Under the pieces are notes generated by a model, which was not told the DNA's origin, searched no databases, and saw nothing but the letters and a program-made list of their open reading frames with translations. Source: Dendrobates tinctorius (lineage: Eukaryota). Taken from it: a DNA stretch of 64,000 nt. The translations under genes were made by a program, and so were the position numbers. The DNA lies in NCBI RefSeq assembly GCF_039654945.1, contig NW_027361878.1, positions 31,000,001 to 31,064,000 of the forward strand, given 5' to 3'. Positions 17,831 to 60,000 of this stretch are shown piece by piece; position 1 is the first letter of the stretch, and each line of letters starts with the position of its first letter.

Positions 17831-17904
17831 TTAAGCAACTAAAAGGCCTGAAGTTGATTTGAGGTGTGGTGCTTGCATTTGGAAGGTGTTACTGTGAAGG
17901 AAAC

Positions 17905-33929: not shown

Positions 33930-34076
33930 GCCTATGTAGTCTTGGGTCAATTTCTTGTGCTAAGGAAAGATGAAGAGCTTTTCAAAGATTGGTTGCGGGA
34001 CACCTGCGGAGCGAACTCGAAGCAGACGCGCGATTGTTATACCTGTCTGAAAGAATGGTGTGATGCCTTCTTGTAA
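33930..34076 (+). CDS. BANF1: Barrier-to-autointegration factor, coding exon 2
   Basis: ttctag|[48 protein letters not shown]; total 90 aa. Confidence 0.97.
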
Positions 34077-39494: not shown

Positions 39495-41855
39495 ATCAGT
39501 CACCTCCGATCCAGCGCTGCTTTGCCAGTCACCTCCGATCCAGCGCTGCTTTGCCAGTCACCTCCGATCCAGCGCTGCTTTGCCAGTCACCTCCGATCCA
39601 GCGCTGCTTTGCCAGTCACAGGTGATCCAGCGCTGCTTTGCCAGTCACAGGTGATCCAGCGCTGCTTTGCCAGTCACAGGTGATCCAGCGCTGCTTTGCC
39701 AGTCACAGGTGATCCAGCGCTGCTTCGCCAGTCACAGGTGATCCAGCGCTGCTTCGCCAGTCACAGGTGATCCAGCGCTGCTTCGCCAGTCACCTCCGAT
39801 CCAGCTCTGCTTCGCCAGTCACCGGTGATCCAGCTCTACTTCGCCAGTCACCTCCGATCCAGCGCTGCTTTGCCAGTCACCTCCGATCCAGCGCTGCTTT
39901 GCCAGTCACAGGTGATCCAGCGCTGCTTTGCCAGTCACAGGTGATCCAGCGCTGCTTTGCCAGTCACAGGTGATCCAGCGCTGCTTTGCCAGTCACAGGT
40001 GATCCAGCGCTGCTTTGCCAGTCACAGGTGATCCAGCGCTGCTTTGCCAGTCACAGGTGATCCAGCGCTGCTTCGCCAGTCACAGGTGATCCAGCGCTGC
40101 TTCGCCAGTCACAGGTGATCCAGCGCTGCTTCGCCAGTCACAGGTGATCCAGCGCTGCTTCGCCAGTCACCTCCGATCCAGCTCTGCTTCGCCAGTCACC
40201 GGTGATCCAGCTCTACTTCGCCAGTCACAGGTGATCCAGCGCTGCTTCGCCAGTGACCTCCGATCCAGCTCTGCTTCGCCAGTCACAGGTGATCCAGCTC
40301 TGCTGCCCCAGTCACAGGTGATCCAGTGCTGCTTCACCAGTCACAGGTGATCCAGCTCTGCTTCGCCATTCACAAGTGATCCAGCGCTGCTTCATTAGTC
40401 ACAGATGATCCAGCTCTGCTTTGCCAGTCACAGGTGATCCAGCTCTGCTTCGCCAGTCACAGGTGATCCAGCTCTGCTTCGCCAGTCACAGGTGATCCAG
40501 TGCTGCTTCGCCAGTCACAGGTGATCCAGCTCTGCTTCATTAGTCACATGATCCAGCTCTGCTTTGCCAGTCACAGGTGATCTAGTGCTGCTTCGCCAGT
40601 CACAGGTGATCTAGTGCTGCTTCGCCAGTCACAGATGATCCAGCTCTGCTTCACCAGTCACAGTTGATCCAGCTCTGCTTCGCCAGTCACAGGTGATCCA
40701 GCGCTGCTTCGCCAGTCACCGGTGATCCAGCTCTGCTTCGTCAGTCACAGATGATCCAGCTCTGCTTCGCCAGTCACAGGTGATCCAGCGCTGCTTCACC
40801 AGTCACAGGTGATCCAGCTCTGCTTCGCCAGTCACAGGTGATCCAACTCTGCTTCACCAGTCACAGATGATCCAACTCTGCTTCACCAGTCACAGGTGGA
40901 TCCAGCTCTGCTTCGCCATTCACAGGTGATCCAGCGCTGCTTCGCCAGTCACAGGTGATCCAGCGCTGCTTTGCCAGTCACAGGTGATCCAGCTCTGCTT
41001 CGCCAGTCACAGGTGATCCAGCGCTGCTTCGCCAGTTACAGGTGATCCAGCTCTGCTTCGCCAGTCACAGGTGATCCAGCTCTGCTTCGCCAGTCACAGG
41101 TGATCCAGCTCTGCTTCGCCAGTCACAGTTGATCCAGCGCTGCTTCGCCAGTCACCTCCGATCCAGCTCTGCTTCGCCAGTCACAGGTGATCCAGCTCTG
41201 CTGCCCCAGTCACAGGTGATCCAGTGCTGCTTCACCAGTCACAGGTGATCCAGCTCTGCTTCGCCATTCACAAGTGATCCAGCGCTGCTTCATTAGTCAC
41301 AGATGATCCAGCTCTGCTTTGTCAGTCACAGGTGATCCAGCTCTGCTTCGCCAGTCACAGGTGATCCAGTGCTGCTTCGCCTGTCACAGGTGATCCAGCT
41401 CTGCTTCATTAGTCACAGATGATCCAGCTCTGCTTTGCCAGTCACAGGTGATCTAGTGCTGCTTCGCCAGTCACAGGTGATCTAGTGCTGCTTCGCCAGT
41501 CACAGATGATCCAGCTCTGCTTCACCAGTCACAGTTGATCCAGCTCTGCTTCGCCAGTCACAGGTGATCCAGTGCTGCTTCGCCAGTCACAGGTGATCCA
41601 GCTCTGCTTCGTCAGTCACAGATGATCCAGCTCTGCTTCGCCAGTCACAGGTGATCCAGCGCTGCTTCACCAGTCACAGGTGGATCCAGCTCTGCTTCGC
41701 CATTCACAAGTGATCCAGCGCTGCTTCGCCAGTCACAGGTGATCCAGCGCTGCTTTGCCAGTCACAGGTGATCCAGCGCTGCTTTGCCAGTCACAGGTGA
41801 TCCAGCGCTGCTTTGCCAGTCACAGGTGATCCAGCGCTGCTTCACCAGTCACCGC
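39495..41855. repeat. 29-bp satellite array (ccagtcacaggtgatccagcgctgcttcg), ~2.4 kb
   Basis: Roughly 80 visible tandem units with recurring variant units. Confidence 0.95.
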
Positions 41856-42378
41856 CGTATTCCAAGCTCATCTACACCAGTCACTGTCGACCCAGCTCCA
41901 TTGACATGGCATCTCCTCCACAGCCCTGTCCCCTGTTCTGCTGCACCAGCGCCTCCTGTCCATGCTGCTCCAGGACTGCTCTTCCAGACTTGGGGCTTGA
42001 ACGATTCACCTCCCCAGGTCAGACGTAACATAATACATGATGTATATTTGACACAATTGTGCACAAAAATTAATTTTTTTATTTTTTTTCCCCATGAAGG
42101 TTTTGAGGAGGTAAGTTACTGTTTGTTCATTGTACTTTTTCTAACGTGCACATTTTCAATAGACCACTTTTTTTTTTTTTTTAAAGAAAAGGAAATTCTA
42201 TGGTGATTTTATTAGCGAGAAAATCTGCACAATGGAATAAACAAAAATAAAAAATGAAGACATAAGATATTTCTGTTATTATTGCATATTTAGCGGTTTT
42301 ACTTCATTTTTCTGGCCGGCAGGATCTTCTTGCTGAGGAGTCCGGCTGGGTGACCGCTACATGACTGCTGGTGGCCGA

Positions 42379-42462
42379 TCACACTTCTTCACATGTTTTG
42401 CCGATAATAGTTAATTTGAATTTCGAAGGATTTTGCCTTATAAAGTAATGACACTTTTCCAC
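42379..42462 (-). CDS. Divergent type-2 cystatin, exon 3
   Basis: ccacag|VEKCHYFIRQNPSKFKLTIIGKTCEEV*; second disulfide pair (C-x19-C); AATAAA on the minus strand at 42208-42213. Confidence 0.8.
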   Translation of the reverse strand: MEKCHYFIRQNPSKFKLTIIGKTCEEV

Positions 42463-42920
42463 CTGTGGAGCATAAAAGACAAAGAATCTAAAATACCGTT
42501 ATATTTACATAAATAACCACATTTGCCCCATTCTGGACACCAAATTATGGGTCGTGCCACTCAATAGCCTCCCTACAACCTTTACAAAAGAGATGGCTCT
42601 AGGCACAATAACGTACGCAGTATAGAAGTCCCGAGTGAGGCAGACCCCATCGATAACTTCCGGCCACTCAATGCCACGTAGTGGCACAACCTCCCAGGTT
42701 CTGGTGCTTTAGACAAGTCGGAGAGGGATATGTAGCAAAGGCAGAGGAGACCCCAAATTATGAGAAGAGACCTCCCCAAATACTAGGCTATTCTCTTTTT
42801 CTAGGAGTTTCCCAAACTTTTTTTTTGCATAAGCGGCTACTACAATACATCAAATTTACATTTGGTAACTCGGCCTTTCCAAGTACAGCAAAGTATACTG
42901 AGAATAAAGACTAGTAGTAC

Positions 42921-43028
42921 CATCATGTGCTCAAATCCAGGGGTCTTGCAGGTCTCTAAATTTTCTTCTTTGAGGCACCCGGTTGGCTCTATAATGACTG
43001 TAAATTGGTAATTTATCCAATTGGCGAC
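42921..43028 (-). CDS. Divergent type-2 cystatin, exon 2
   Basis: tttaag|VANWINYQFTVIIEPTGCLKEENLETCKTPGFEHMM|gt; NY-x-F...T-x-C-x-K...C pattern; phase 0 to 0. Confidence 0.8.
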
Positions 43029-44794
43029 CTTAAATGAGGAAAACATAAGAAGAAACAAATGGTAAAAACTTTAGACTTTACTATACGTAGCATACATGAT
43101 ATTAAATAGTTCTTAGACTTTATGAGACCGATGTAGTTACTTTGAAAATCCTTGTCACGATCTCTATAATTCTTTCTGAAAGTCCCCCCCGTCTCATTAA
43201 TGTAAAAAAAATGTTGACTACAGATTTTCAAAATAAGTACACTAGGCTCATCAGGTCAACGAGATCTATTTACTAATGGATGCAGTTTTGGTGAAATCTG
43301 GTGACCGATCCACATTAAATAGGTTGACCTGTACAACATATTCCCAGATGAATTTCTTCTATAAATATGTATGTACTTACTTTACTATAATATACTTGTA
43401 TTAAGAAAGCTCCACTGATGACTCGGCTTCACCATCGATCTCGGGTCCTAGAAGAAGAACTTCCACTTTGTGCTCAACAGAGTCAGCAATCACTATGGGG
43501 ATGGAGACTTTAAGGAGTATCTCAACGCCAGACCCCCCCCCACTCCAAAAAAAAAAAAACCCTGGGGGCATGAGCGTTATATTACTCCCATCCACTCTGC
43601 TGGAACTGTAAGATGCTGCATTTTGGGGGGTAAATTCTAAAGTTTGCTATGGGGCCCTGGATTTCTTGCCATTTTATCTATGTCTTGCCCTTTGTAAATG
43701 TTTAGGCCGTATAATAGTAATCCACTAGGGAGTGGTTTTTCGAGGTATTAAGAGGGTAAACATCGAAGCTGAGAAGTTTAATCAAAGCATTAGAAATTGA
43801 AATTGTGTAAATGTTTGGAGTGAAATTCAAGAGTTGAATTGGCTCTGGTGCAGGATTAGCAAATGCAATTGGTGCAATGTGCAAAACCCTGCTCTACGTC
43901 ACATTATCTTGTCATGCCATGTGCGCACGAGACATTTGCAGATGTTTATTTTGCATTAAAAGCTTTTTCTTTTTAATAATTGTATGGTATTGGGGGTCAT
44001 GGTCCAACCTCAGGGTCCCGTACTGAACGTGAGAGGCACTTAGGTCTAGGTAAGACTTTGCACTACAGTGTTGATGTAGGGTGGCCTGGAATAAGGTGCT
44101 CCAAATTCATTAAAGAGGACCTGTCGCTAGATCAAGAGTGTCCTGTTTGGGCTCTTAGTTTATTCCTTCTACTTCACTGAGTAATACACAGTTTGTTTTT
44201 TTGGAATCCACCATATCTCCACCAGAGATATGGGCCTTTTAATTTTGTGATAATTTTAAGAATTCTTACTAAGGGGGCGTGGTTCACAGGGTAATTATGC
44301 AGAACAACCTAAAGACACGCCCCAGAGGATCTTGTGAGCGCATATACTACCATATCTCTGCAACTGTATGGGAGATAAAAAAAAAACTCAACTCAGGGGA
44401 ACAATGGGAAAAAAAGTAAGAGCCCAACAGGCAATTTTCGACATGGTGACAGATTCGCTTTAAATCTGGATGTGTTTGGATTGGGCATAACGCTTGAGTT
44501 GCTGAGGTCTTAGCCTGTAAGCAGAACCAGATTTTTATCAGAAGACTCCTTGACAGCTCTTCTCGAATGCTATACCAAGAAAAACAGAACAAGCTTTCTA
44601 AAACTTCACATTATATACATAGGGGCATAATTATAGGACCATCTTCCACATAAAGGCACCCCAGTATGTGTTGTATGTTAAAAACCTAAAGAGATGAACT
44701 AGAATATAAGTTTGTGTGCATGCAAAGTGTAGGTGCATGTTCACATTGACTATTAAACAGACAAAACCTAAGATAAAAGAAAAAAAAAAAAATG

Positions 44795-45045
44795 AGCAAA
44801 TACCCTGCAGTAAATAAATAGCATTACTGCATGAAAATAACATTGGGTACTTAGTTAACATAATAATGTTAATTAAAAAAAAGCCATTCCACCACATCAA
44901 GGTGACCCTATTTAGTCCCCAATAGGGTCACTTTGATGTGGTGGGATGGCTTTTACATTTTTTGATAATAATTATGTTAACTAAGTACCATATATTATTT
45001 TTATGCACTATTGCTATTTCTTTTTTAGTGCAGAGTATTTGCTTG
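44795..45045. repeat. AT-rich inverted repeat (foldback) in cystatin intron 1
   Basis: Arms agcaaatac...gtacttagttaacataat...ccaccacatcaaggtgaccctatt / aatagggtcactttgatgtggtgg...attatgttaactaagtac...gtatttgct. Confidence 0.8.
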
Positions 45046-46537
45046 TGTATTATATGTTGTGTTGTACATAGTAGGTAAAGAGATGTGCTACAGATATTGC
45101 ACATATTACAGCAGCTCAGGGCTTATGCTCAGAAACAAGAAGTGGTTAAATGGAATCTGTCAGTGATCTAGGGTATTTGTTGGCAAATCCATCAATTATA
45201 GTGGCCAGGTGGCAATCAAATGCTTTGCTATGGCTGCCGCTGGTGCAATAGGCAGCAGTTGTATCCCAGGACTTTATGTCTTAGGTTGCTCAGAAGATCT
45301 CTTGCCAATTAAGACAGCTGTATTATCGATGGAACCTGGCAGGAGTCTGAATCTTAGTCTGGACCACAGAGACTAAAATGTACACCATTTTCAGCAATCA
45401 AATGTCTAGATGATACCTGTTAAACTGTTGTAGGGGCAATGGGACCCCCACTAATTGCCAGAACAGGGGTCTTATGTATGTCCCCTTCTTATTCCCTGGA
45501 TCTTCACTGGTCACAAGATCATGCTCAGGAGGAGCTGAGTGGAGCGTCTGTTCATGCACGGGCGCTTCTGCCCTGCTCTAAGCTTATGACGCAGCACAGG
45601 GGTCCTTGTCAGTATTTAAAGGTTTATTCTGATCTACATATATTATCACTTGTCTCCTAGATAGGTGATAAGGATTAGATTGGTGTTGGTTCTATCAATG
45701 GGACCCCACTGATAGACAGGTCCCCAATCTGGAAATCTTTGTATCGTCAACGCCATACATATTAGGCAGCGGTCGGCAAATTGGACAGCTATCTCTGCCA
45801 ACTTCTCCATAAATAGGAAAGCTCCTCTATGAGAAAGCAGCCTAAAGACACACCCCATAGGATCCTGGGAGCACCACCCACTTAGTAAAAACCATAAAAA
45901 GTAGCACTAACCAAATCGGAGCCATATGGCATATCTAAAAAAAAAAAAATTTGGCTACGGCTATATACATATTTATTCTTTATGCGCGAGCCACTGCCAG
46001 CTTCTAATGGTGGTGGCTTGTCTCCCAGTGAAGAAAAGGATCGGCCATTGGTTGGAAATCCAACGGCTGGTTCCTTCTATATCCCGACACCATTTGTGGG
46101 GGAAGAGTCAGGAGACTCTCGTAAATATTAGACTGTTGGCTGATTTTGCCAATATTGTTGCATTTGGTCAGTTTTGGTCTAATAATGTTAATAGAGGTTG
46201 CGTTGTGTTGTGAATGAATGCCATCTTCCTCATGTTCTCAGCTGCAATTATAGAGAACAACCATGATCAGTATAACCAGGGCACTTGGTGCTCAAATGGT
46301 CATTTCAGGAGAAGAGAGGGAAAAAAAAGAGAGAGAATTTTGTTGTTCTCCAACCATGATCAGTGCTACATCAGTGCTCATCCGACACGTTCCCCATTGT
46401 CGATTCTTCTGTGTTTTTACAGGACATTGGGTTTTAGTTTTTCAGTCTCGTAATTATTAAAATGTAAGCTAAAATCTATGAAAAGTGAAAAAAAACGGAT
46501 CACATTTCTCCTGTACTGTAAGAAATGGTTTCTTTAC

Positions 46538-46768
46538 CTGCATCAGTGCCTCCTCCACTTCAGTGATCTTGCTCCAGTACCGACTGGAATTTTTCTTATT
46601 GTACGAGTTCTGTAGAAGCTTTGCCATTTGCATTACTTTTTTGGAGTCCAGGGGCAAAGTGTTCCATCCTCCGAGAACAGGAGCAACCTCCGCTTTAATC
46701 AATTCCTCCATAGGGGCGCAGTAGCCAAAAGAGACAAACGAAATGAGGAGGAGTATGATAGAATTCAT
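46538..46768 (-). CDS. Divergent type-2 cystatin, exon 1 (signal peptide); positional counterpart of CST6
   Basis: MNSIILLLISFVSFGYCA (signal peptide)...VLGGW...YNKKNSSRY...EEALMQ|gtaaag; intron falls right after the loop-1 Gln as in type-2 cystatins; joined product 140 aa. Confidence 0.85.
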
Positions 46769-46821
46769 ATTTCCATCTGATACATGCAACAAATAAGGCA
46801 CAAGACGTCCTGCGATGCACC

Positions 46822-46837
46822 TTATATATATGCAAAT
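46822..46837 (-). promoter_or_regulatory. TATA box (TATATAA) with adjacent octamer, cystatin-like gene
   Basis: Minus strand atttgcatatatataagg, ~55-60 bp upstream of the ATG at 46768. Confidence 0.6.
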
Positions 46838-47043
46838 GGAATCTAGTGTATCCCCTTAAGTAAAGTACACGTGTGAGGAGTCAAGTCATGTAACTTTACT
46901 AACAGCAAATATTAGGACTTGTCAACAAAGGACGGTGTGGTTAGTTTACAGGTGTAGGTCTTGTAAAGGCTCTTCTTAAATAGGTATCTCATGTTTGTTG
47001 TTTGGGTGCACACATCTTCCCAGCCTCAACGCCTCCCTCCTTA

Positions 47044-47552
47044 GGCTACTTTCACACATCAGGTTTTTGCCGTCAGGCAGGATCCGGCTATTTTTTAGAA
47101 AAACCGGATCCGGAGTAAATTTTGAAGAACTGTAGAAACGGATCTGTTTTTCTGCCAGATCCATCTAGCAGGTTATATCTGTTTCCTGGGGGCTGGCCAA
47201 TTGGATCTGAGCATGCGCAGACTTAAAAAAAAGGATCCGGTGGCCGGATCTGTCTTTTTCCAGATCCGGCGCCCATAGACTTTCATTGTGGCAAAAAGCT
47301 GGATCCGGCGCTGTCCGGTTTTTCGCCGCAGACAAAAAACGTTACTAGAGACGTTTTTTCCAGATGCCGGAATCAAAATTTTTCCCGGATCCAGCAAAAA
47401 CCGGAAGAAACGGAAGGCCATGCGGCACGATCAGGCGCTAATACAATTCAATGAGAGAAAAACTGATCCGGCGCCTGATTTCGCCAGATCCGGTTTTTCT
47501 ACAAATAGCCGGATCCTGCCTGACGGCAAAAAACTGATGTGTGAAAGTAGCC
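47044..47552. mobile_element. Harbinger-type MITE (same family as 14882-15396)
   Basis: TTA|ggctactttcacacatcag ... ctgatgtgtgaaagtagcc|TTA. Confidence 0.88.
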
Positions 47553-49175
47553 TTACTGGGGAACATTGTGTTCCTGAAGAACGACAGTTCGGGCCTGTGA
47601 AGTAGCTTCACCACTGCTCTGTACCATCTCAAACTATGTAGTAAGACCCAGCTAAGTGTATAGGTGCTGCCCAGTCGGGTGCAGGATATTCCTGCTGACC
47701 AACCTATTGTTTATGTGATTAGTATATTGTTCTTTGGCCACCATGTACTATTTAAGAGTTACCAGTTATTGGTAATAATCCTGATGCGCTGTTCTTACTG
47801 TTGAAACCTGACCCAGCTTGTAACGTTCACATCATCCAAGTCTGTGATTGCTTCAGACGTTTGCCTTTGGGTTGTTGACGGATACCGAAAATCGGAGACC
47901 CCTCTCCTATAGACCGTGAATGAAGCGGTGTTCACATCGCTCCCATGACTGGAAGGGTTGGACTCCTAACAATCATATATTTATCACCTATCTTGGACAA
48001 ACCCTTTAAATGAGTGAAAAGGTATCAATATTGACAACAACGCTTAATATTTACTTCCTGTAAGATCTGACCGCTCTCTAATATCCCCATGATCCATGAC
48101 AGCACAATTTTATTAACTAAAAGTAAACAATCAAGTTTCAGTCTGTAATCTTCATTCCTTCATTAATTTTAGACCTCCTGATTTGCAGTTTGTAGCCTGA
48201 TCCAAGTCTCAAATTGTTCTCTTACAGGAGTGTCCCTCTCAGTAATACAGTCTGTGTGTATCCAGGACGCTTCATTAATTAATATCAGCACATCTTCTAT
48301 GCTGCACTTATTTCCTCTTCATGAATGGTATTTTACATTAGACCTTAATGGGTTATTGTAATGATCTTCTCTTCAGGACTACACAGCTCTCTTGGCTCCC
48401 GGATACCAGTTTGTAGGGGGGGAGGGGGGACACCATCCACTCCTAGTGATAGATATCTTGGACCAGTGGCTTGGTTGAGCCGCTAGTTCGAACTATGCGC
48501 TGCGGGCGGCGGAGGCAACTTTTCCACTGCAGCATTGGAGGAGCGCAGGGATACTGACGCTGGGCAGATTCAGAGGAGCACTATGCTCCTTGCCTAAGAG
48601 ACCGGCCACCACTGATAAGACTACAGAGGTGGTCGGTAAATGCAGTAATCTCTGAGAACGTAGAGGATTTTTAACAAGCTGAAAATTGCAAAGTTGTTAG
48701 CTTTTAATGTCACTTTACAATTTCACCCATTCAGGAGAAAACACCGTTAAGATGGATTGAACCTTTAGGAGTTAATAACTTTGTAGACCAGTTCTTGTTC
48801 AACAGCAAGAAAGTTACAAAATAAATAATAATGCAATTATTACACTTTCATGATATAAGGACATAGATTTTATTAAAAATGATCTGTGCAAATTAGAAAC
48901 AGAAAGCAAGGCAGAAGATTCATCAAGATGTACGCTGTTTAATTAGTCTGGCACGTCTTCAGGCTGCTACTGCAAATAATGTCCATATCTGTAGTCATTT
49001 AAGTAACACTTTTGGGGAGTAAATTATTAATTTCTGTTTGGCAATTGCACTCACTTCTAAAAAAAAACCTTGTGTGGCGTAAAAGATCGCAAAGATTTTC
49101 TGCACACACAAAAAAGAAAAAAAATAACACAGTATAAACAACAGTCTCTACACCAAGTGGGCACATGGTCTAAAG

Positions 49176-50825
49176 CACATATGTCAAACTCTGGCCCATG
49201 GGCCAAATCTGGCCCTCAGGGTGAGTATATTTGGCCCGCCATGCCGAGCAGATCCCCCGAGTATATTTGGCCTGCAATCCCTTGGGGGTCCCCCGGCCCG
49301 ACATAGCATTTTAAATTATATTGGCATCCTAGATGCTGATACAGTTGAAAGCAACAATGGAGGGAGGAGAGTCAGATTACGCTCCCTCTCCCATTATTAC
49401 CCCTCTGCGTCTGACGTCTCAGCGCAGTGGGTGCGATGACGTCATTACAACGTGCCCACAGTACCGAGGTGTGCAGAAGAGACCGAAGCAGTGGGGGAAT
49501 GGGCAGAGCAGAGGTTTTTTGTAATGTAGGTCCTATTATACTGTATGGAGTACTACATGAGCCCATTATACTATATGGAACACTATATGGGGCCATTATA
49601 CTGTATGGGGCACTTTTTGTTGCCATTATACTGTATGGAGCATGTTATGGGGCCATTATACTGTATGATATGAAGCACTATGTGGGGCCATTATATTCTA
49701 TGGAGCAGTATGTGGGGCCATTATACTGTATGGAGCACTATGTGAGGCCATTATACTGTATGGAGCACTATGGGAGGTCATTATACTGTATAGAGCATTA
49801 AGTGAGATCAATTAAACTATATAGAGCACTATGTGGCCATTATACTGCATAGAGCACTGTATGAGGCCATAATACTGTATGAAGCAGCACTTTTTGTGGC
49901 CATTATACTGTATGGAGCAGTGTGTGGTGCACATTATACTGTATGAAGCACTATGTGAGTCCATTATACTGTATAGAGCACTATATGGGGCTGTTATACT
50001 GTATGGAAGGCAATGCAGGGCCTTGTTATACTGTATAGAGGACTATGTAGAGCTGATTAAATTGTATAGAGCACTGTGGGGCCCTTATACTGTATGGAAG
50101 ACTATGTGGGGCCATTATACTGTATGAAGGACTAAGTGGAACCATTATACTGTATGGAGCACTATGTGGGGCCATTATACTGTATGGAGGACAATGTGGA
50201 GCCATTATACTTTATGGAGGACTAAGTGGGGCCATTATACTGTATGGAGGACTATGTGGGGTTTATTATACTGTATAGAGCACTATGTGGAACCATTATA
50301 CTGTATGGAGGACAATGTGGGGTCCATTAAACTGTATGGAGAAGTTCTTTTTGTGGCCATTATACTTTATGGAGGGCTGCCTGGGGATCACAATTGAGGC
50401 ATTATACTGTGATGGGTCATCATACTGTGCATATGGAGGGTACTATTGAGGAACACACTGTGGGGGTATCATAGTGTGTTTGGGGGACACATGATTTTGC
50501 ATCATACTTTATTATCTGTATTATTCAAGATTTTTTATTCTTTGTTATTACATATTTAAAGTAGTCCATTGGGTCATATGCTTTTTTTTACTGCTTTTAC
50601 ATATATATTATTCCAATATTTTATTTTAAGATGTATTCATTAACATGTGCTTTGTTCGTGTGACAACCCCTTTAAGTTTGTTTCCATATGAAAATGTTCA
50701 TAGTTATTTTTGATAAGGTAAAGCTTCCTCAATTGTAGACATTTTTTAAATAAATCAAGGCTGGCCTGAGACTTTCTCCAAGCTTTTAATTTTGTCCCTC
50801 TGGATATTTGAGTTTGTGATCCCTG
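49176..50825. mobile_element. hAT (Charlie-like) non-autonomous element with a ~30-bp minisatellite (49530-50420)
   Basis: 8-bp TSD gtctaaag on both sides; degenerate TIRs ca...tcaaactc / gagtttg...tg; internal repeats of ccattatactgtatggagcactatgtggg. Confidence 0.75.
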
Positions 50826-51687
50826 GTCTAAAGCGACACTATCTGCTGCCTATGCAACAGATGCAAAAAGCTGAGGAAAAAAAGTCACTGGCTAAGTGCA
50901 TTTGACATCTTTTTAAGGCGGATTCCAACATAGAAACCGCATGAAAAAACTGTAAAAAAAAAAAAAAAAAAAACAATGATGAGAAATAATGAACCCATGC
51001 AATCCTATGTAAAGATGACTCACTGTTCATGCATTCAGGCTTTTGAATGTCTTAACAATTTTAGGATCTAAAAACGCTAAGAAATGACTGATCTATTCTT
51101 CCAGCGTTTTACTTTACAATACAAGACAATGGAAAAGCTCAAAAGATGATCGGAAGCCAACAAAAAAAACACCAAAAAAGTTGGTCTCCAGAAATTGTCA
51201 GTGTTTGCATTAGATTATTTCACAAAAAGGCACGTCATGGTAAATACAATCTGGTCATATAAATGAAAGCACTCCAATAATGGTGACCACCATGGGAATT
51301 ACATGGCTTTGTGTTTTCTAAGAGGGTCATTGGACACTACAGTACCATGAAACTGCATGGACTGAGCCACAAAACAGTTCTCTGCAGGAAATGACAGAAA
51401 CTTCTATAACAGTTATTGATGATGATTAGACAGCTCCTCTCATATAGTTATATTGTAGAAGATCATACTGCAGCTCAATAATTGTATACATTAAATGTTG
51501 TCATATAGGCGTGGAAGAATTAATACACAGTCACATAAGCAAGCAAGAGGTGGTGCTTTCCTTTGGAAATGATTGCACCAGTGCTAATGGAAGGGTATAT
51601 CATCTACATGTCCCTTCATTATAAAGGTGCAGATATAAGGCAACCTCGCAATATGCATATGGAACGGATTTATTCTGGTCCATCAGT

Positions 51688-51713
51688 TTATTCCATGACT
51701 TCAGGGGTTGTAC
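51688..51713 (-). CDS. Candidate terminal exon of the C1-domain gene
   Basis: Strong acceptor tgtttttttag; in phase 1 gives (G)TTPEVME* with two AATAAA at and just after the stop. Alternative exons (51901-51972, ~48988) cannot be excluded. Confidence 0.35.
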
Positions 51714-53343
51714 CTAAAAAAACAGAGGAAAACATATATATGTTTGTAATGCAGTATCCTTCTCACCTGGAAGCTGAAGCTGCTTGTTGCCACATTTTAT
51801 GATAAAAGTCAAATTATTAAACATACTTCTACTATTATAAATGGGTTTTCTACACTTTCACTGGGTTTTCTACACTTTCACACTGGTGACCTGAACTTAC
51901 CAGCTGGAGATGTTTACATCCGGCTTCTGCTGGAGTTGATAACCTCACCAATTTTATATTGATGACATACCCTATAAGCAGGTTAATATCAAGGTGGTGC
52001 AAATCCCCTTTAACCAAGCATAAAAACAGAGGGTGAAAATATTGGCAAAACAGCACAATCTTAAAGAGGTTGTCCAGGTTTTGGTCCAAGTCTTCAGTCA
52101 CTCTATCTGACTGCAGACTTGTGAATCTGCACAACGCACGCTGTCAGAATTCTCCGGTGCCGGAAGAGTAAGCGGACATATGAGTGCAAGTATGCGATTT
52201 GTATACATGCAATCACGTGCCGACTAGAAGGCGCAGCCTCACTCAATACAAGTGACTTGAGCGCTGTTGGACACATGTAGTTGGATTGTGACTGGTAGAA
52301 TGCTGATCACATACTTCAGGGCATGTGCCCACCGCTCCTGGAGCCAGCACCGGAGAATCCATACATTGCATCCTTTCTTCCTTTTCTTGGAGTCATTATA
52401 CGTCCTGGCAGAGACGTGTCCGCGCTCAGAGCTTTTCAATAGTTCTTACGAACCTACAAGAGGTGAGCTGAAATTTATCTTTTTCAGTATCCTGTAAGGA
52501 TGCACAAGTCTGCAGTCATATAGAGTTGGGGGGTGTTTTTTTTTAAATTAAAGTATTTGTGTATGTGTTTCTTTTTCTTTTTTTTTTCCCCTGATAGACC
52601 CCTCTCCACTACTAACACTAGGGCTTGATGCCAGCTGTGTTTTTGGACAATTCACATCTGACATCAACCCTAACTACCATTACCCCAATTGCCAACGCAA
52701 CAGGGCAAATGGGACGAGACCACGGCAAAGTGCCATAATTGGCGCCTCTAATGCGATGCGCCACTTCTGGGGCGGCCGTGGACTGGTATTTTTAGGGTGG
52801 GAAGGTCCCAATAACCAAGGACTTTCCCAGTCTGGTAATATAAGCTCACAGATTTCTGTTTTACCCTTACTGGTTCCAAAAAATAAGGGGTATGTATTGT
52901 CATTTGTGCTGCTGGAAAAAAAATGGACATGTCTACGTGTGGGTCACACGGTCCGTGTGAAAACAGGGACATGTGCGCAGCCCCATAGATTCTAATGGGG
53001 GTTGCATATGTGCTTGTCTCCAGTACGTGTGAAAAATGACGTCACATGTAGTGGAAATGCTGACTTGTCAAAGGGGTCTTCTTAAATAGATAAATTATGT
53101 CAACTCTGATCAAACATCAGCTAGAAGCTGTGTAACTTCAGAACTAGCAAGTATGTCAGAACTAGCATCACAGCCAGCTATGTGCAGCGGTAGCACAGAC
53201 TTTACCGCAACAAAATGGAAACAAGTAGTTATTGAAGTATAGTTAGAAAGTTGGTTCATTTTGCATTTAGGAAGCAATAACATGAAAAAACTGTGTGTAA
53301 AAAAGGTGTAAAGGTGAAAGAATATTTTATGTATCAAATCTAC

Positions 53344-53427
53344 CTTTTTCATCAGCATTAGTTATCTCTCTCAGGCATTCATCTGGTACATCTGCTACAC
53401 ATCGTCTGTGGACATTAAATTGGCAGT
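53344..53427 (-). CDS. C1-domain gene, coding exon 2
   Basis: ctacag|(D)CQFNVHRRCVADVPDECLREITNADEK|gtag; phase 1 to 1; completes the C1 zinc finger. Confidence 0.88.
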
Positions 53428-54123
53428 CTGTAGAGAATGGATTAATACATTACATTTAGGCCTATATAGCGCACTCCTTGATGCAAATATGGAAGACAAT
53501 TATTCATGCCATCATCTTTTTATGTCTTATTTGCAGAAATAATCATAAGGGATGTGGATCGCAACTTATGGAAACTGAGATGTCTGAACTTTGCATGATA
53601 TATCGATTCTTTTTACAATTCTAAAAATATCACTTGGCTACTAAACATCACATAAAAACTGAATTATATCTGTGTTTTGTTACTATATATTTTGTTGATT
53701 TTGTTTAGCTTCCAGATTTATTTTTAGACGTATAGGGTTGACAGGGCATATATCACAGGTGCTAACGGAGGGACCAAAGAGCTGGTCTGTCCTGGCAAAA
53801 TATGAAGATAATTGAGCTAGGCAACTAACTGAATTATTGACCCTAGTGAAGGAAGCCTACCTATAATACTTGTGAATTCCAACAAGCACCAAAGGGAACT
53901 GCCAGAAACAAGATTACTAAATATTCTGGTTTCTCAAAATCTCACTTGTACTATGGGAGAACCTTTAGGTTATGTGCAGATGTGCATTTTTCTCACGTGG
54001 GTTCTTTCCGAAACCCATCTAAATAGTGCAAATTGAGTGATTAAAAGAATGACTATATGCATTTCTCTGTAAAAACAACTCCCTGTTCATATGTTCAGTG
54101 TTTTGAGCATATTTTGACCACTT

Positions 54124-54572
54124 TAGGTTTCTTGACTGGCCCAGCCAGAGCCCTGACCTAAACCCAATTGAGCATCTCAGGAGAGACCTGAAAATGGCTG
54201 TCCACCAACGTTCACCGTCCAACCTGACGGAACTGGAGGGAATCTGCGAGGAAGAATGGCAGAGGAACCCCAAATCCAGGTGTGAAAAACTTGTTGCATC
54301 ATTCCCAAAAAGACTCATGGCTGTACTAGCTCAAAAGGTGCTTCCACTCAATACTGAGCAAAGGGTCTGAATACTTATGGCCATGTGAGATTACAGTTTT
54401 TCTTTTTTAATAAATTTGCAAAAATTTCTACATTTCTTTTTTTTTCAGTCAAGATGGGGTGCAGAGTGTACATTAATGAGAAAAAATGAACTTTTTTTAA
54501 TTTACCAAATGGCTGCAATTAAACAAAGAGTGAAAAATTTAAAGGGGTCTGAATGCTTTCCGTACTCACAGT
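54124..54572 (+). mobile_element. Tc1 3' fragment in the C1-gene intron
   Basis: DWPSQSPDLNPIEHL...NLTELEGICEEEW followed by the right TIR region ggggtctgaatgctttcc. Confidence 0.8.
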
Positions 54573-55097
54573 AACTAATTAACGTTTTTTTCCTGAACTA
54601 CATCTCTTCAATCTTTATCTGAACTTAGGGCATGCCAATTTTTAGTTATAGCAGAACGTATAGCTTTGTCCAGGGACCAAATTTAAAACTAAAGATGAAT
54701 CTCTTGGGTTTTGCACAGTTGTTATTAACGCGAGGTGTCCTAAGTGCTTTAGGACCTGTCAAAGTGTCTGATCCCCTGCATCCATGTACTACTTGTATTG
54801 AATGAAGAAAGGATTGTTTTACTGCATCACAGAGTGCCACCTATTTTTTTCCTTTTTGACCTGGACTTTGTACAACGCTGATTGTTTTCAGACCTGGATT
54901 TAGTTCAAGAAGGGGTTTTCCTAGTAGTGGACAACCCCATTAAACCACAGCCGTCAAAGAAACATATAGCAGTCTGTGGTCGGCTTCATAAAAAAAAGTC
55001 ACTGATCGTCCATTATGACTTCTCAGGTGTTTGCAAAAAATAATGACAAATAAACCGTTGGAGGTGATCAATAAAAAGTAGAATAATACACATTTAC

Positions 55098-55215
55098 CTT
55101 TGCACTGCATGCCCTGTTTGAACATCCCCCAAAGAAGACCTTGGCAGTGCTGACAAAATGTGGGACGTGTGTATGTGCGGTCTTCAAAAGTATGGGAGAC
55201 CTTCACTCTGTCCAT
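55098..55215 (-). CDS. C1 (DAG/phorbol-ester-binding) domain gene, first coding exon; PKD C1b-like
   Basis: [39 protein letters not shown]|gtaaat; acceptor ttctttccttcaag near 55250; in-frame TGA six codons upstream of the ATG. Confidence 0.88.
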
Positions 55216-55754
55216 GTTCCAGCCAATCTTTCAATATAGGTCCGACCCCTTGAAGGAAAGAACACGAGATTTCTTTGTATTACGAAACGATATAAGAGAA
55301 AAAAAAGAATTCTTCTAAGTAAATGTATCATGGCAATAAACCTTTATATGTGCCTGTTTATAGAATGGTAGCTTTAAGGCACAATGTAGAAGGGCATCTT
55401 TCTTTTTTGAAGAAACCATTTTCTCTTCTAAAACAGAAAGGGCCTGTGCACACGTTAAGTATATACCGCATTTTTGGTACATTTTTTTCCATGCAGTTTT
55501 TCCACAAAAACGGCAGCATTTCCTAGTACCCGCAAAGTGAATGAGATTCCTCAAGATTCATGCACACGTTGCCTATTTTTGTCTTGTAGATTTGATGTAG
55601 CTTCAAATGTGCAGAAAGTCAATTTTTTCAGTGTTTTTGCTAAGTTTTCCCCTGTTCCAATGCATGTAAAAAACCACATAAAAAAAATGCAAGTCAAAAA
55701 ATGCTGTGTTTTTCCCTTTTTGGTGCAGAAATGTTCACTGCATAAGTCCTCTGC

Positions 55755-57050
55755 ACATACCATTACTGTAGTATTTGGGTTACCTCCCCCCCGTACTGTA
55801 GTGTGGGCCTTTCTCTCTTTTTCAGGTAACCTAATATTAAAAGTTAAAAGGATTGATGCCTTTGATCAAGTGCGTAGGAACGGGCTGCTCACACCCTGTC
55901 TAAATGCTCAGCAGCTGCTGTGACCTAGAGACAATCTATACCATGTACTGAGCACTACAATGCACGAAAGCTCGGTACTCGAATCGAGCAGGTCGGACGC
56001 TCAGACGGGCTCAACTCGAGTCACGAGTTAAATGAAAGTTAATGGGAAACTCGCCTCCATGATGAAGCATTGCGAAACGCGCGTCGGGGCATGAGGGATG
56101 CTCTAGGAAGCACCATCAGTTTGCGGTATATCACAGTGGCATTTTCATATGCGCCCATTATGTTCTATACATTGAATCTAGGGCAATTATAGGAGTTTTT
56201 TGCTGGGTACATATTTTAGTGGACTGACCCATAATATATCTGCGGAGGGGGAGCCTAATTGGCCTAATAGGGGACAGAGTGTTTACTACCACCTTAAGTA
56301 TTATTGTGCCCTATTATTTCTTTTGCTCCTTAATAAACTATAGGGATCACCTAACAGTTTAGGCTATATGTGTTAAGGGATATTAGTGGGTTAGCCGTTC
56401 TCAAACTTGTCGGACATATCTGAGGATAGTCGGTTCATGATTGTAGATGAAGTAAATTACGTTGGTCTTTCCCTGTGGTATACTTTATACTATGCCCTAT
56501 TTTTTGCCTTTAGAAGAAATGCTGTTATGTTGTGCTTCCATGGCATATGGTCCTCTCTTACACTGGTCTAGCACCTTCTTTTTAATGGTTGTAATTTGTA
56601 CTGTTCATAAATAAAATTATCTTTTAAATATACCATTGTGTGGCACCTTCTTATAAATAAGAAATCAAGGTTACCACAAAAGGTGATAATAGTTGTTTTG
56701 TGGTATATTTCCCAGTATGGGGTGTTGAAAAATTGAATTGGGCAATTTTGGTGAACATACCATTACTGTAGTATTTGGGTTACCTCCCCCCCTACTGTAG
56801 TGTGGGCCTTTCTATCTTTTTTAGGTAACCTAATATTAAAAGTTAAAAGGATGGATGCCTTTGATCAAGTGCGTAGGAGCGGGATGCTCACACCCTGTCT
56901 AAATGCTTAGCGACTGCTGTGACCTAGAGACAATCTATACCATGTACTGAGCACTACAATGCACGAAAGCTCGGTACTCGAATCGAGCAGGTCGGACGTT
57001 CAGACGGGCTCAACTCGAGTCATGAGTTAAATGAAAGTCAATGGGAAACT
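55755..57050. repeat. ~297-bp direct duplication (55755-56052 and 56755-57050) enclosing a Penelope-like segment that begins at a minimal hammerhead motif
   Basis: Near-identical copies of cataccattactgtagtatttggg...atgggaaactc; the intervening sequence starts gcctccatgatgaagcattgcgaaacgcgcgtcggggc. Confidence 0.7.
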
Positions 57051-60000
57051 CAAGAATTTTTGCGAAAAACCCTAACAGGAAAGTTGGGAGGAGGAGGGGG
57101 CAAGAAAATAGATGAAAAGGATGGAAATAGCGCTCGAATGGAATAGGAACAGCATGGGGAAGACGCCTGGATGCATCTCTGACTCTCAGGTCGCTGCTGG
57201 GAACAATGTTGTCAGAGTATTACTCCACTTTTACGGACCGACAATAAAACATACAAAACCAAAGATAAAACGGATTTTACAGGAAAAATTATAGGAAACA
57301 TTATTTCCTGTATAATGACTTGTATATAAGGCAAAATGAATCCCTTAAGGACCAGGCCACTTTGTAGGTTAATCACTGGGCCTCCTTTTTTTTAAATCTG
57401 ACCACTGTCACTTTATGAGGTTATAACTCTGGAACGCTTCAACAGATCCCACTGATTCTGAGAAAGTTTTCTTTGTGACATATTGTACTTCATGATGGTG
57501 GTAAAATTTATTTAACATGACTTGCGTTTTTTTGTGAAAAAAATCGGAAATGTGGCAAAAATGTAGAAAATGTCACAATTTTCAAACTTTGAATTTTTAT
57601 GCCCTTAAATCAGAGAGTGATATCGCCCAAAATAGTTAAGAAAAATCATCTCCCACATGTCTCTTTTATATCAGCACAATTCTTGAAATATAATTTTGTT
57701 TTGTTAGGAAGTTATAAGGGTTAAAAGGTGACCATCGGTTTCTCATTTTTCGAACAAAATTTACCAAACCATTTTTTTTAGGGACCACATCACATTTGAA
57801 GTCACTTTGAGGGGTGTACAAGACAGAAAATACCCAAAAGTGACACCATTCTAAAAAGTGCACCCCTCAAACAACGTTCAAGAATTTTATTAACCCTTCA
57901 TGTGCTTCACATGAACTGGAGAAATATGGAAGAAAAAAATGAACATTTAACTTTTTTTCACAAAAATTTAACGTAAAACCCAATTTTTTTTTATTTCCAG
58001 TAGGTTCAGGAGAAAATGAACCCCAATATTTGTTCTGTCATTTCTTCTGAGTATGCTGATGCTCCGCATATGGGGACAAACCACTGTGTGGGCACATGGC
58101 AGGGCTCCAAAGGATAGGAGCGCTGTTTGACTTTTTGAACACAAAATTGACTGGAATGGAGAGCGGACACCATGTTGCGTTTGGAAAGCCCCTGATGTGC
58201 CTAAAGAATGGAAATCCCCCAAATGTGACCCCATTTTGTAAACTAGATCCCTCAAGGAACTTATCTAGATGAACCCGCAGGTGCTTCACAGACTTTTATA
58301 ACATAGAGCTGTGAAAATAAAAAAATATTTTTTCCACAAAAATTATCTTTTAGCCTCAAATTTTTTTATTTTCACAAGGGTAACAGGAGAAAATGGACTG
58401 CAAAATGTGTTGTGCAATTTCTCCTGAATGTGCCAATACCCCATATGTGGAGGAAAACTACTTTTGAGGTACAGTGTAAAGCTCAGAAGGGAAGAAGGGA
58501 CATATTGAAGTTCAGATTTTGCTGGAATGGTTTGAGGGTGTCATGTCACATTGGCAGAGCCCCCGAGATGTCAGACCAGCAGAATCCCCCATAAGTGATG
58601 TCATTTTGCAAACTACACCTCTCAATAAATTAATCTAGGGGTGTAGTGACCATATTGACACCATATGTGCTTCACAGAAATTTATACCATTGGGCAGTGA
58701 AGAAAGAATAATTACATTTCTTCCACTGAAACGTTGTTTTAGCCCAATATTTCTAATTTTTATAATGGCAAATAGGAAAAAAAATGACGTCTCAGTTTGT
58801 TGTGCACTTTCTCCTACGTGTAATCAGGAACTACCTTTGAGTCACAGTACAAAGCTCAGAAGGGAAGGAGCACTATATTACAGTGCAGATGTTAGTGTTA
58901 TGGTTTGAGGGTGCCATGACCCACTGGGAGAGCCCCTGAGGTGGCAGAACCCCCATAAATGACCCCATTTTACAAACTACACCTTCAGGCTGTGTGCCCA
59001 CAATGCGTTTTGCTAAGCATTTCCGCAGCGTTTGTGCCGGCTCAGACGCTGCAGAAAAGCTTAAAAGATGCATCAAATTAATTTGCATGCGTTTTTGGCT
59101 TTTTGTGCCAATGCATGCGTTTTTAACCGCTCAGGAATCGCTTAGCGGCTAAAAACGCAGCATGCTCATTAATTCCCGCATTGCTGAGCGTTTTTAGCCA
59201 TCCCCAATGTTCCCAGAAATCGCGTGTCACAAAACGTGTCAAAAACGCGTGGCTTTTTGACAAAAACTGCGCAAGAAACGCACGGAAAAAGACACACGGT
59301 TTCTGGGAAGGGGATCAGTTTCCTGAGCGTTTAAAAAAGCTAGTGTGGGCACATAGCCTCAATTAATTCTTCTAGGGGTGCAGTGATCATATTGACACCA
59401 CAGGTGTGTCACAGAATTTTATACCATTGGGCAGTAAGGAAAAAATAACTACATTTTCACCACCAACATTTTGTTTTAGCCCCAGATTTTACATTTTCAA
59501 AAGGGTAACGTGTTACACCAGCCTGCTATCCTGTCTTATAAATGCAGGAGTGACAGTCTTAGGTATCTGGTGGCTGCAAACAAGTGTCCCTTAATCCTTC
59601 TTACCAGAAATGTTATCACGAAGGGGAATAAAATGGTGGATGTCTTCTGCACAGCAGTCTGTGAGGTAATGAGCTTCTTCTTCCTACAATGCAGCACTAC
59701 AGAGCAAGAGACGGGAAGTCCAAAGGGACAGAAAGCTTCTTCCGTAAATTCAGCCACCAGATGGGAGTCTGTGCTAACAAATACTCACTAATGAAACGGA
59801 AATGGAACGTGTCCCCAAGACTTAACGCTGATAACCTGCAGATATGGAGTTAATCTGCAGGTTAACGTGTTATTATGCTGCCCGGCGCCTGCACATCGCC
59901 GAATGCATCGGGGAGAAAATTAACTTTATACTCCCCACCAGCATTCGGTTTCAGTGACAGGGACGGCGCCTGTCCTGTCACCGCTCTGAGTGCGACGGCT

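What the first reader, a model, noticed from the sequence alone, without database searches (positions are those of the whole stretch)
51688..55250. Stand-alone 'typical' C1 microprotein, apparently derived from protein kinase D C1b, with a high-affinity Trp22
Seen: two spliced minus-strand exons give [67 protein letters not shown], a perfect H-x12-C-x2-C-x13-C-x2-C-x4-H-x2-C-x7-C finger. Pro11, Trp22, Gly23 and Gln27 are intact. An in-frame TGA just before the ATG rules out N-terminal extension through this exon, and I found no PH or kinase exons in the ~6.5 kb before the cystatin promoter. The simplest product is ~76 aa. Known: the flanks (RVKV-x-HTF, QGMQCKDC, CLxEIT) resemble PKD-family C1b, especially PRKD3 as I recall it. 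PKD C1b carries Lys at C1 position 22 and binds DAG poorly, whereas Trp22 is the high-DAG-affinity residue of novel PKCs. Inference: a relocated partial PRKD duplicate retained as a kinase-less DAG sensor, sink or dominant-negative regulator, or a binder of phorbol-like compounds. All ligand residues are conserved despite divergence elsewhere, which suggests selection rather than decay. C1-only proteins are not a family I recognise in vertebrates.
Basis: partly seen in the sequence, partly recalled or inferred. Interest (0 to 1): 0.8.

Follow-up and report, generated by a model that had tools for sequence, protein, structure and literature searches.

The report
Stand-alone C1 microprotein gene in poison frogs
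Three small exons really do make an expressed 75-residue protein that is only a diacylglycerol/phorbol-type C1 zinc finger, probably the last surviving piece of a protein kinase D gene that land vertebrates otherwise lost.

Summary
Minus-strand exons 55215-55098, 53427-53344 and 51713-51688 have GT/AG borders and encode a 75-aa protein. It is one complete C1 domain (Pfam E 1.3e-19) with Pro11, Trp22, Gly23, Gln27 and Gly28.

Spliced contigs with exactly these two junctions occur in two public RNA-like runs. NCBI models of 77 and 75 aa sit at colinear loci in Ranitomeya imitator and Phyllobates terribilis. No PKD C1a, PH or kinase exon lies anywhere in the window or those loci.

The C1 core is under purifying selection; the tails drift.

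The parent is a PKD C1b. Decayed PKD coding sequence continues upstream of the ATG, and the 84-nt middle exon has the same borders as in shark and ray PKD genes.

Several signatures point to the fourth PKD paralogue ("PKD3-like" in elasmobranchs), not PRKD3. That paralogue lies beside FKBP2 in a manta ray. By my recollection FKBP2 shares human 11q13 with the window's EIF1AD and BANF1. An in-place relic is therefore slightly more likely than a relocated duplicate.

The binding loop has shifted from the PKD to the PKC pattern, and the core has lost its positive charge.

Translation, lipid binding and cellular role are untested.

The parts
55098..55215 (-). Coding exon 1: ATG with A at -3 and G at +4. 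It encodes residues 1-39, the first half of the C1 domain through QCK, plus the first base of the split Asp codon.
   Evidence: The junction 55098/53427 is seen in contigs of runs X1 and X7. The same exon is present in L001 and L002.
55216..55278 (-). 5' untranslated stretch that is decayed parental PKD coding sequence (remnant of the ..SFSGRPIW.D..EM.RVKV linker). It holds the in-frame TGA at 55233-55231, caused by a 1-nt insertion relative to the other two frogs. The X1 contig starts at 55249.
   Evidence: tblastn alignments. Conceptual translations. Shuffle test of the Phyllobates vestige against shark sequences: 30 of 5000 shuffles reach the observed score. No ATG lies between 55249 and the start codon.
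55289..55296 (-). Candidate TATA-like element (CTTATATC), conserved in the three frogs about 40-45 nt upstream of the first base of the X1 contig. This is an inference only.
   Evidence: Sequence. The transcription start was not determined.
53428..55097 (-). Intron 1 (GT..AG), at the ancestral position inside the QCK|DC codon, phase 1. It carries a Tc1-like transposon remnant at about 54129-54600.
   Evidence: Joint 53427->55098 with CT..AC ends in X1 and X7. Same position and phase in the PKD genes of L003 and L005 (the exon that ends there was not recovered for L004). Transposase-tail ORF.
53344..53427 (-). Coding exon 2, 84 nt: second half of the C1 domain and 10 residues beyond the last Cys.
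   Evidence: The exon has the same length and the same borders in the PKD genes L004 and L005.
51714..53343 (-). Intron 2 (GT..AG).
   Evidence: Joint 51710->53341 (cut +3) with CT..AC ends in X1 and X7.
51645..51713 (-). Terminal exon: last 8 codons (G-TTPEVME), TAA at 51690-51688, and AATAAA at 51692-51687 and 51674-51669. The spliced contigs end at about 51666 (X1) and 51644-51647 (X7).
   Evidence: The tail aligns with the start of the next PKD exon (G..PE) in shark and ray sequences.
51200..51687 (-). Non-coding region after the stop that is as conserved as the exons. It is either a longer 3' UTR isoform or a separate element. Unexplained.
   Evidence: Identity profile and alignment. An X1 contig with no mismatch covers 51201-51678 and runs on. 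No Rfam match.

Best explanation
This is a real, transcribed, three-exon gene of dendrobatid poison frogs. Its only product is a 75-residue protein made of one typical C1 zinc finger and a short acidic tail.

It is what remains of a protein kinase D gene: the two exons encoding C1b and the first codons of the next exon. The start codon is an internal Met of the parent, and the old upstream coding sequence has decayed into 5' UTR.

The parent was most likely the fourth vertebrate PKD paralogue. None of its other exons (ubiquitin-like domain, C1a, PH, kinase) survives nearby.

Since truncation, the ligand loop has changed from the PKD C1b pattern (PTV/IC ... CKKLLKGLF) to the pattern of diacylglycerol-sensitive PKC C1B domains (PTFC ... 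CQGLLWGMF, Trp22). The core has lost its net positive charge.

Shown: gene structure, splicing, orthologues, selection on the core, PKD origin and fold.

Inferred: the protein is translated and inserts into membranes that carry diacylglycerol (or binds phorbol-type ligands). Having no catalytic or adaptor domain, it would act as a competitor or buffer for diacylglycerol effectors such as PKC and PKD.
For: Structure and domain.

Splicing: both junctions sit in one 284-nt contig of run X1 (depth 99, no mismatch) and in one 264-nt contig of run X7. Intron bins in X1 have zero depth.

Orthologues: P0001 (77 aa) and P0002 (75 aa) are the only small relatives found. Their loci are colinear and have the same three exons.

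No N-terminal extension: in all three species the reading frame upstream reaches a stop before any ATG.

No other PKD exons in the window, L001 or L002.

Selection:
- dN/dS is 0.05-0.45 in the core and about 1 in the tails.
- Of 36 substitutions, none hits the 12 zinc or ligand residues (P 0.0097).
- Core non-synonymous changes number 11 or fewer (P 0.013).

Fold: the AlphaFold model superposes on PKC-delta C1B at 0.7-0.8 A over 50-52 residues.

Consensus residues: Pro11, Gly23, Gln27, Gly28, Phe13, Leu20, Trp22 and position 24, as defined in PMC9110374, are present.

PKD origin:
- The nearest domains are PKD C1b, at 31-33 of 50 identical against 27 for PKC.
- The best-likelihood tree joins it to PKD C1b.
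- The upstream vestige matches the PKD linker.
- The 84-nt exon borders are identical to those of PKD genes, and the second border is absent from a PKC-delta-like gene.
Against: - No evidence of translation: no ribosome profiling or peptides.
- Tissue and expression level are unknown. Two of the four runs laid showed no spliced contig, and the runs are only guessed to be RNA.
- Overall dN/dS is 0.3-0.7, and the excess of synonymous change is weak (P 0.09).
- The C1 core has net charge 0 to +1, against +6 to +9 in PKD C1b and +4 to +6 in novel-PKC C1B. This could weaken binding to anionic membranes.
- Position 24 is Met, and position 20 is Phe in two species.
- The AU test does not formally reject a grouping with PKC C1B (p 0.155).
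- The gene was found only in three dendrobatids.
Confidence: 0.6

Rival explanations
1. Origin rival: a small genomic fragment of PRKD3, PRKD1 or PRKD2 was copied to this unrelated place in a frog ancestor and kept. It is not an in-place remnant of the fourth paralogue.
For: AU tests do not reject a clade with PRKD3 (p 0.44) or with PRKD1/2 (p 0.25). NCBI named the orthologues 'D3-like' and 'D1-like'. Only about 3.6 kb with three exons is present, as a small segmental copy would give. The immediate neighbours of the fourth paralogue in ray, manta and toothfish are not the window's neighbours.
Against: The ML tree puts it with the elasmobranch fourth paralogue at 88/96.

Shared signatures with that paralogue, absent from PRKD1-3:
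- SF instead of SW in the decayed linker.
- Met two residues before RVKV.
- Val or Ile after RC.
- The G..PE tail.
- CQHC is also shared, but invertebrate PKDs have it too, so it may be ancestral.

Flank scores are 30-33 (best shark members) against 25-27 upstream, and 22-27 (two members) against 10-18 downstream.

That paralogue lies next to FKBP2 in Mobula. The window carries EIF1AD and BANF1. From my own knowledge, all three map to human 11q13.1.
Confidence: 0.35
2. Transcribed relic without protein function: the exons are spliced and polyadenylated out of habit or as a non-coding RNA, and the open frame survives by chance or by constraint on the RNA.
For: The tails evolve neutrally. The chance of no stop in 36 neutral substitutions is 0.23. 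The 3' non-coding region is as conserved as the exons, which could mean the RNA rather than the protein is what matters. There is no translation evidence.
Against: - Key residues are untouched (P 0.0097) and the core is depleted in non-synonymous change (P 0.013).
- About 17 of 50 core residues changed since the PKD parent, yet all 12 zinc or ligand residues are kept. Several changes move toward the diacylglycerol-binding consensus.
- There is no frameshift in 225 nt, while the flanks carry many small indels.
- The first AUG of the contig is the start codon, in a conserved strong context. The stop lies in the last exon.
Confidence: 0.2
3. The protein works mainly through protein contacts rather than lipid. 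One version is a free copy of the C1b module that takes part in PKD autoinhibition. Another is a binder of some other partner through its acidic tail.
For: PKD C1 domains contribute to the autoinhibited state, and their deletion activates PKD (PMC6768651 and PMC5258689). The loss of positive charge argues against strong membrane affinity.
Against: The residues kept and gained are precisely those of the lipid or ligand groove and membrane-inserting loops. The tail is the least conserved part. The surface that PKD C1b would use for intramolecular contacts is not known and has diverged.
Confidence: 0.12
4. These are exons of a larger multidomain gene whose other exons lie outside the window.
For: The transcription start is not mapped. 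The X1 contig begins abruptly at 55249.
Against: Upstream in-frame stops occur before any ATG in all three species, and one species has a frame-shifting indel. The stop codon and poly(A) signals are conserved in the third exon. NCBI models have 75-77 aa. No joint links these exons to anything else. No PKD-like exon lies within 8.7-10 kb upstream or in the 51 kb of window downstream.
Confidence: 0.03

Closest known systems
C1b domain of protein kinase D, especially the fourth vertebrate paralogue (NCBI 'serine/threonine-protein kinase D3-like' of sharks and rays; the name prkd4 occurs in teleost papers)
   Same: It has the RVKV-x-HTF lead-in, the QGMQCKDC-FN-H-RC core and the L-x-E exit. It has the same intron inside QCK|DC and the same 84-nt exon. 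A decayed SFSGRPIW-type linker lies upstream.
   Different: No ubiquitin-like domain, C1a, PH or kinase is present. Position 22 is Trp, not Lys or Arg. Position 13 is Phe, not Val or Ile. Positions 18-19 are Gln-Gly, not Lys-Lys or Lys-His. Net core charge is 0 to +1 instead of +6 to +9.
C1B domains of novel protein kinase C (delta, epsilon, eta, theta)
   Same: It shares the PTFC...LLWG loop pattern with Trp22, Pro11, Gly23, Gln27 and Gly28. The predicted fold lies within 0.7-0.8 A.
   Different: It is not derived from PKC: 27 of 50 residues are identical against 31-33 for PKD C1b, the flanks and the second exon border are PKD-specific, and the resemblance in the loop looks convergent. It also lacks the positive charge of these domains.
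microProteins in the sense of small single-domain relatives of multidomain regulators (ID proteins, plant LITTLE ZIPPER); from my own knowledge
   Same: It is small, has one domain, descends from a multidomain protein, and lacks the output domain, so a competitive or dominant-negative action is the natural expectation.
   Different: Classical examples titrate protein partners through dimerisation domains. Here the competed resource would be a membrane lipid. No activity has been tested.
Engineered isolated C1 domains used as diacylglycerol reporters (C1-GFP probes); from my own knowledge
   Same: They have the same architecture as this natural protein: a bare C1 domain that follows diacylglycerol.
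   Different: Those are laboratory constructs from PKC or PKD. This one is encoded by a genome and kept by selection.

Membership tests
Typical (ligand-binding) C1 domain, Pfam PF00130 | Zinc motif H-x12-C-x2-C-x13-C-x2-C-x4-H-x2-C-x7-C | tested here: met
   Translation. All eight ligands are invariant in the three frogs.
Typical (ligand-binding) C1 domain, Pfam PF00130 | Profile score above Pfam's gathering cut-off | tested here: met
   70.2 bits against 26.5, E 1.3e-19, profile positions 1-50 of 53.
Typical (ligand-binding) C1 domain, Pfam PF00130 | Strictly conserved non-zinc residues Pro11, Gly23, Gln27, Gly28, and the hydrophobic cage Phe13, Leu20, Trp22, Leu24 (PMC9110374) | tested here: met
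   All are present. Position 24 is Met (Leu in Phyllobates). Position 20 is Leu here and Phe in the other two species.
Typical (ligand-binding) C1 domain, Pfam PF00130 | C1 fold | tested here: met
   AlphaFold2 model of the 91%-identical orthologue P0001: core pLDDT 73-86, rmsd 0.7-0.8 A to 1PTQ, 7KND and 7L92. The tail is disordered.
Typical (ligand-binding) C1 domain, Pfam PF00130 | Binding of diacylglycerol or phorbol ester and membrane translocation | not testable with these tools
   This needs binding or imaging assays. The neutral core charge leaves the affinity open.
Protein kinase D family (PRKD) | Architecture: ubiquitin-like domain, C1a, C1b, PH, CAMK-type kinase | tested here: not met
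   Only C1b-derived exons are present. tblastn with seven PKD proteins finds nothing else in the window, L001 or L002. It descends from the family but is not a member kinase.
Protein kinase D family (PRKD) | C1b sequence type: RVKVPHTF lead-in and Lys or Arg at position 22 | tested here: inconclusive
   The lead-in and core are of PKD type. Position 22 and the neighbouring loop residues are of PKC type.
Fourth PKD paralogue (elasmobranch 'PKD3-like', teleost prkd4) | Groups with that clade and shares its derived residues | tested here: inconclusive
   ML tree 88/96, and four signatures absent from PRKD1-3 and invertebrate PKDs, plus CQHC, which may be ancestral. AU tests do not reject PRKD3 or PRKD1/2.
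Processed (retro-copied) pseudogene | Intronless copy of an mRNA | tested here: not met
   Two introns lie at ancestral positions and phases.
microProtein (small single-domain competitor of multidomain relatives) | Small, single domain, derived from a multidomain gene | tested here: met
   75 aa, one C1 domain, PKD-derived.
microProtein (small single-domain competitor of multidomain relatives) | Dominant-negative or titrating activity | not testable with these tools
   This needs cell or in vivo assays.

The most novel reading that the evidence does not exclude
Tetrapods did not lose the fourth PKD ohnologue completely. In poison frogs its C1b exons survived in place, beside EIF1AD-BANF1-cystatin. 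They were remodelled (Lys22 to Trp, Val/Ile13 to Phe, loss of charge) into a natural free-standing diacylglycerol-binding microprotein. It would tune PKC/PKD signalling as a lipid sponge, a class of regulator not described in vertebrates.
Probability: 0.3. Interest if true: 0.75.

Novelty: new variant of a known kind. Interest (0 to 1): 0.6.

Why it matters
C1 domains are known as modules inside kinases, exchange factors and other large proteins. A genome-encoded protein that is only a ligand-competent C1 domain would be a natural counterpart of the laboratory C1 probes. It would also be a candidate endogenous damper of diacylglycerol signalling.

The case is also a clean example of gene death turning into gene birth. 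A multidomain kinase gene decayed to three exons, an internal Met became the start, and the binding loop then evolved toward a different specificity class.

It gives a simple experimental handle (Trp22 versus Lys) on how C1 domains set diacylglycerol affinity. It also draws attention to a little-noticed fourth PKD paralogue.

The gene models exist in NCBI under misleading 'kinase D-like' names. I found no paper on them.

Tried and rejected
- **Polypyrimidine-AG at 55250 as an acceptor for an upstream exon.** I first read it this way. It is better explained as old coding sequence (Ser-Phe-Lys of the PKD linker). Whether 55249 is a start site or a graph break stays open.
- **Read depth at 55801-56000 as a 5' exon.** That stretch is one copy of a repeat also present at about 56760-57070.
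- **Intron position inside the C1 domain as proof of PKD origin.** A fish PKC-delta-like gene has the same first intron. Only the second border discriminates.
- **AU tests to name the parental paralogue.** 65 columns are too few.
- **Direct synteny.**
  - tblastx of elasmobranch flanks against the window gave only transposon and low-complexity hits.
  - The ion-channel neighbour in the stingray could not be named from PDB searches.
  - Two proteins were not on record, and two loci had no neighbour within 10 kb.
- **The large protein search for more distant small relatives.** It could not show them, because two-domain proteins fill its top 150.
- **Rfam.** No match in 50000-56000.
- **The claim that PKD C1b binds diacylglycerol poorly because of Lys22.** I could not verify it in the open papers searched. 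It rests on my recollection of Chen et al. 2008.
Full report
**1. What is in the sequence**

Three coding exons lie on the minus strand: 55215-55098, 53427-53344 and 51713-51688. They have GT/AG borders and join in phase to a 225-nt frame of 75 residues. Residues 8-57 form a complete C1 zinc finger; Pfam C1_1 scores 70.2 bits, E 1.3e-19.

The start codon has A at -3 and G at +4. An in-frame TGA lies at 55233-55231. The stop is followed at once by two AATAAA signals.

The best solved-structure matches by sequence are C1B domains of PKC beta, gamma, alpha and delta.

**2. Is it a gene?**

Of four public runs laid on 51201-57200, two carry one contig each that joins the three exons exactly as predicted. 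The joints are 53427->55098 and 51713->53344, both with CT..AC ends on the plus strand.

- In X1 the contig has 284 nt, depth 99 and no mismatch. It runs from 55249 to about 51666.
- In X7 it has 264 nt, depth 12 and three mismatches.
- Intron bins in X1 are empty, so the material behaves as RNA, although the record only guesses so.
- X5 and X9 show no such contig.

The word search found two small relatives only: a 77-aa model in Ranitomeya imitator (91% identical) and a 75-aa model in Phyllobates terribilis (77%). Both loci are colinear with the window and have the same three exons, borders, stop and poly(A) signals.

In all three species the frame upstream of the ATG meets a stop before any ATG. 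The window also carries a 1-nt insertion there.

No joint links these exons to others. tblastn with seven PKD proteins finds no further PKD exon in the window or in either locus. A larger protein is therefore very unlikely.

**3. Selection**

Non-coding identity is about 0.80-0.87 to R. imitator and 0.72-0.80 to P. terribilis. The exons reach 0.92-0.95 and 0.87-0.89.

Pairwise dN/dS is 0.27-0.59 overall, 0.05-0.45 in the C1 core and about 1 in the tails.

On the three-species tree there are 36 substitutions, 13 synonymous and 23 not. In 200,000 neutral simulations with the same number and kind of changes:

- Keeping all 12 zinc and ligand residues has P 0.0097.
- Having 11 or fewer non-synonymous changes in the core has P 0.013.
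- The overall excess of synonymous change is weak, P 0.09.

The core is constrained; the ends are not.

**4. Where it came from**

Domain by domain, the nearest sequences outside the family are PKD C1b domains, at 31-33 of 50 identical. PKC C1B domains reach 27.

In a tree with PKD C1a, PKD C1b, PKC C1A and PKC C1B:

- The PKD C1b group is supported at 99/95.
- The best-likelihood tree joins the microprotein to PKD C1b.
- Forcing it to PKC C1B costs 6.9 log-likelihood units, which the AU test does not reject (p 0.155).

Evidence outside the domain is clearer.

- Upstream of the ATG, the Phyllobates sequence still reads in frame as a recognisable copy of the PKD linker before C1b (..SFSGRPIW.D..EM.RVKV). 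The window and R. imitator carry the same stretch with a stop. A shuffle test gives 30 of 5000.
- The intron inside QCK|DC has the same position and phase in the ray and manta PKD genes. The 84-nt exon has the same length and borders in the shark and manta genes.
- A fish PKC-delta-like gene shares the first intron but not the second border.
- The eight tail codons align with the start of the next PKD exon.

So three consecutive PKD exons survive, and the start codon is an inherited internal Met.

**5. Which PKD?**

Sharks and rays have, besides PRKD3, a second gene that NCBI calls 'PKD3-like'. It is 62-78% identical within that group and 56-58% identical to any PRKD3. The name prkd4 occurs in two teleost papers.

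The ML tree of the C1b region puts the microprotein with this group at 88/96.

It shares several features with that group:

- SF rather than SW in the linker.
- Met two residues before RVKV.
- CQHC, although invertebrate PKDs also have it, so it may be ancestral.
- Val or Ile after RC.
- A G..PE tail.

AU tests cannot exclude PRKD3 or PRKD1/2. I put the fourth paralogue at about 0.75.

**6. In place or moved?**

The window holds EIF1AD (minus strand, about 25.7 kb) and BANF1 (plus strand, 32.7-34.1 kb).

The fourth paralogue's neighbours in other species are:

- In Mobula, 3.4 kb upstream of FKBP2, identified by two exons that match FKBP2 best in the PDB.
- In a stingray, beside an ion-transport gene.
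- In the toothfish, the gene I take for its teleost counterpart lies beside an alpha-actinin gene.

From my own knowledge, EIF1AD, BANF1, CST6, CATSPER1, FKBP2 and ACTN3 all map to human 11q13.1-13.2. PRKD1, PRKD2 and PRKD3 lie in the three sister regions (14q, 19q13, 2p22) together with ACTN1, ACTN4, MAP4K5, MAP4K1 and MAP4K3, while MAP4K2 lies at 11q13.

That is where a fourth PRKD would be expected. I therefore favour an in-place remnant, at about 0.55-0.6. Adjacency to the same neighbours was not shown, and I could not search frog genomes.

**7. What changed, and how it may work**

Compared with every PKD C1b examined, the changes are:

- The loop is Gln-Gly-Leu-Leu-Trp-Gly-Met-Phe instead of Lys-Lys/His-Leu-Leu-Lys/Arg-Gly-Leu-Phe.
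- Position 13 is Phe instead of Val or Ile.
- The core net charge is 0 to +1 instead of +6 to +9.

The first two changes reproduce the consensus of diacylglycerol-sensitive C1 domains, in which Trp22 raises the apparent affinity (PMC9110374).

The model of the orthologue has the C1 fold, at 0.7-0.8 A from PKC-delta C1B. Its tail is disordered.

The most likely mechanism is ligand-dependent insertion into diacylglycerol-bearing membranes with no output. That amounts to competition with PKC, PKD and other C1 effectors. The lost charge may make binding weaker, or more strictly dependent on the ligand. All of this is inference.

**8. Left unexplained**

- The 490 nt after the stop are as conserved as the exons but clearly non-coding.
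- An X1 contig runs from 51678 for about 1.4 kb downstream.
- The stretch 51554-51686 matches, at about 91%, internal parts of 1-2 kb contigs in all four runs. This points to an expressed paralogous sequence that I could not identify.

**9. Verdict**

It is probably wrong in detail about the parent and the relocation.

It is a new variant of a known kind. It has been annotated automatically, but I found no paper that studies it.

Noticed in passing
window 51200-51690: The non-coding stretch after the stop codon is as conserved among three dendrobatids as the coding exons. It has 1-, 2- and 4-nt indels and no Rfam match.
   Followed up: partly
window 51554-51686: This stretch matches, at about 91%, the inside of 1-2 kb contigs in all four runs laid. 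That suggests an expressed paralogous copy elsewhere in the genome. No second copy exists in the window or in the two orthologous loci.
   Followed up: partly
window 39300-47900 (includes the cystatin-like gene at 42379-46837): Homology of both the R. imitator and P. terribilis loci to the window stops at 47901. Neither the cystatin-like gene nor BANF1 is found in their 10-kb downstream flanks. The region may be an insertion or duplication specific to the window's species, or those species may have larger spacers.
   Followed up: partly
window 49535-50374: A minisatellite of 27.5 copies of a 30-nt unit, also present at the orthologous place in R. imitator (L001 about 17258-18226).
   Followed up: partly
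window 54129-54600: A Tc1-like transposon remnant in intron 1. Its family is very abundant in all four runs, with depths in the thousands.
   Followed up: no
window 55760-56060 and 56760-57070: Two copies of the same roughly 300-nt element lie 1 kb apart upstream of the gene. They account for read depth that might be mistaken for a 5' exon.
   Followed up: partly
L003, L004, L005, L007 (elasmobranch loci) and L006 (toothfish): Sharks and rays carry a full-length fourth PKD gene, annotated 'PKD3-like', in addition to PRKD3. In the toothfish assembly the corresponding gene is split into two models (309 aa and 729 aa).
   Followed up: partly
window 25716 (minus) and 32715-34073 (plus): EIF1AD and BANF1 exons lie in divergent orientation. 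As I recall it, this is the arrangement at human 11q13.1.
   Followed up: partly
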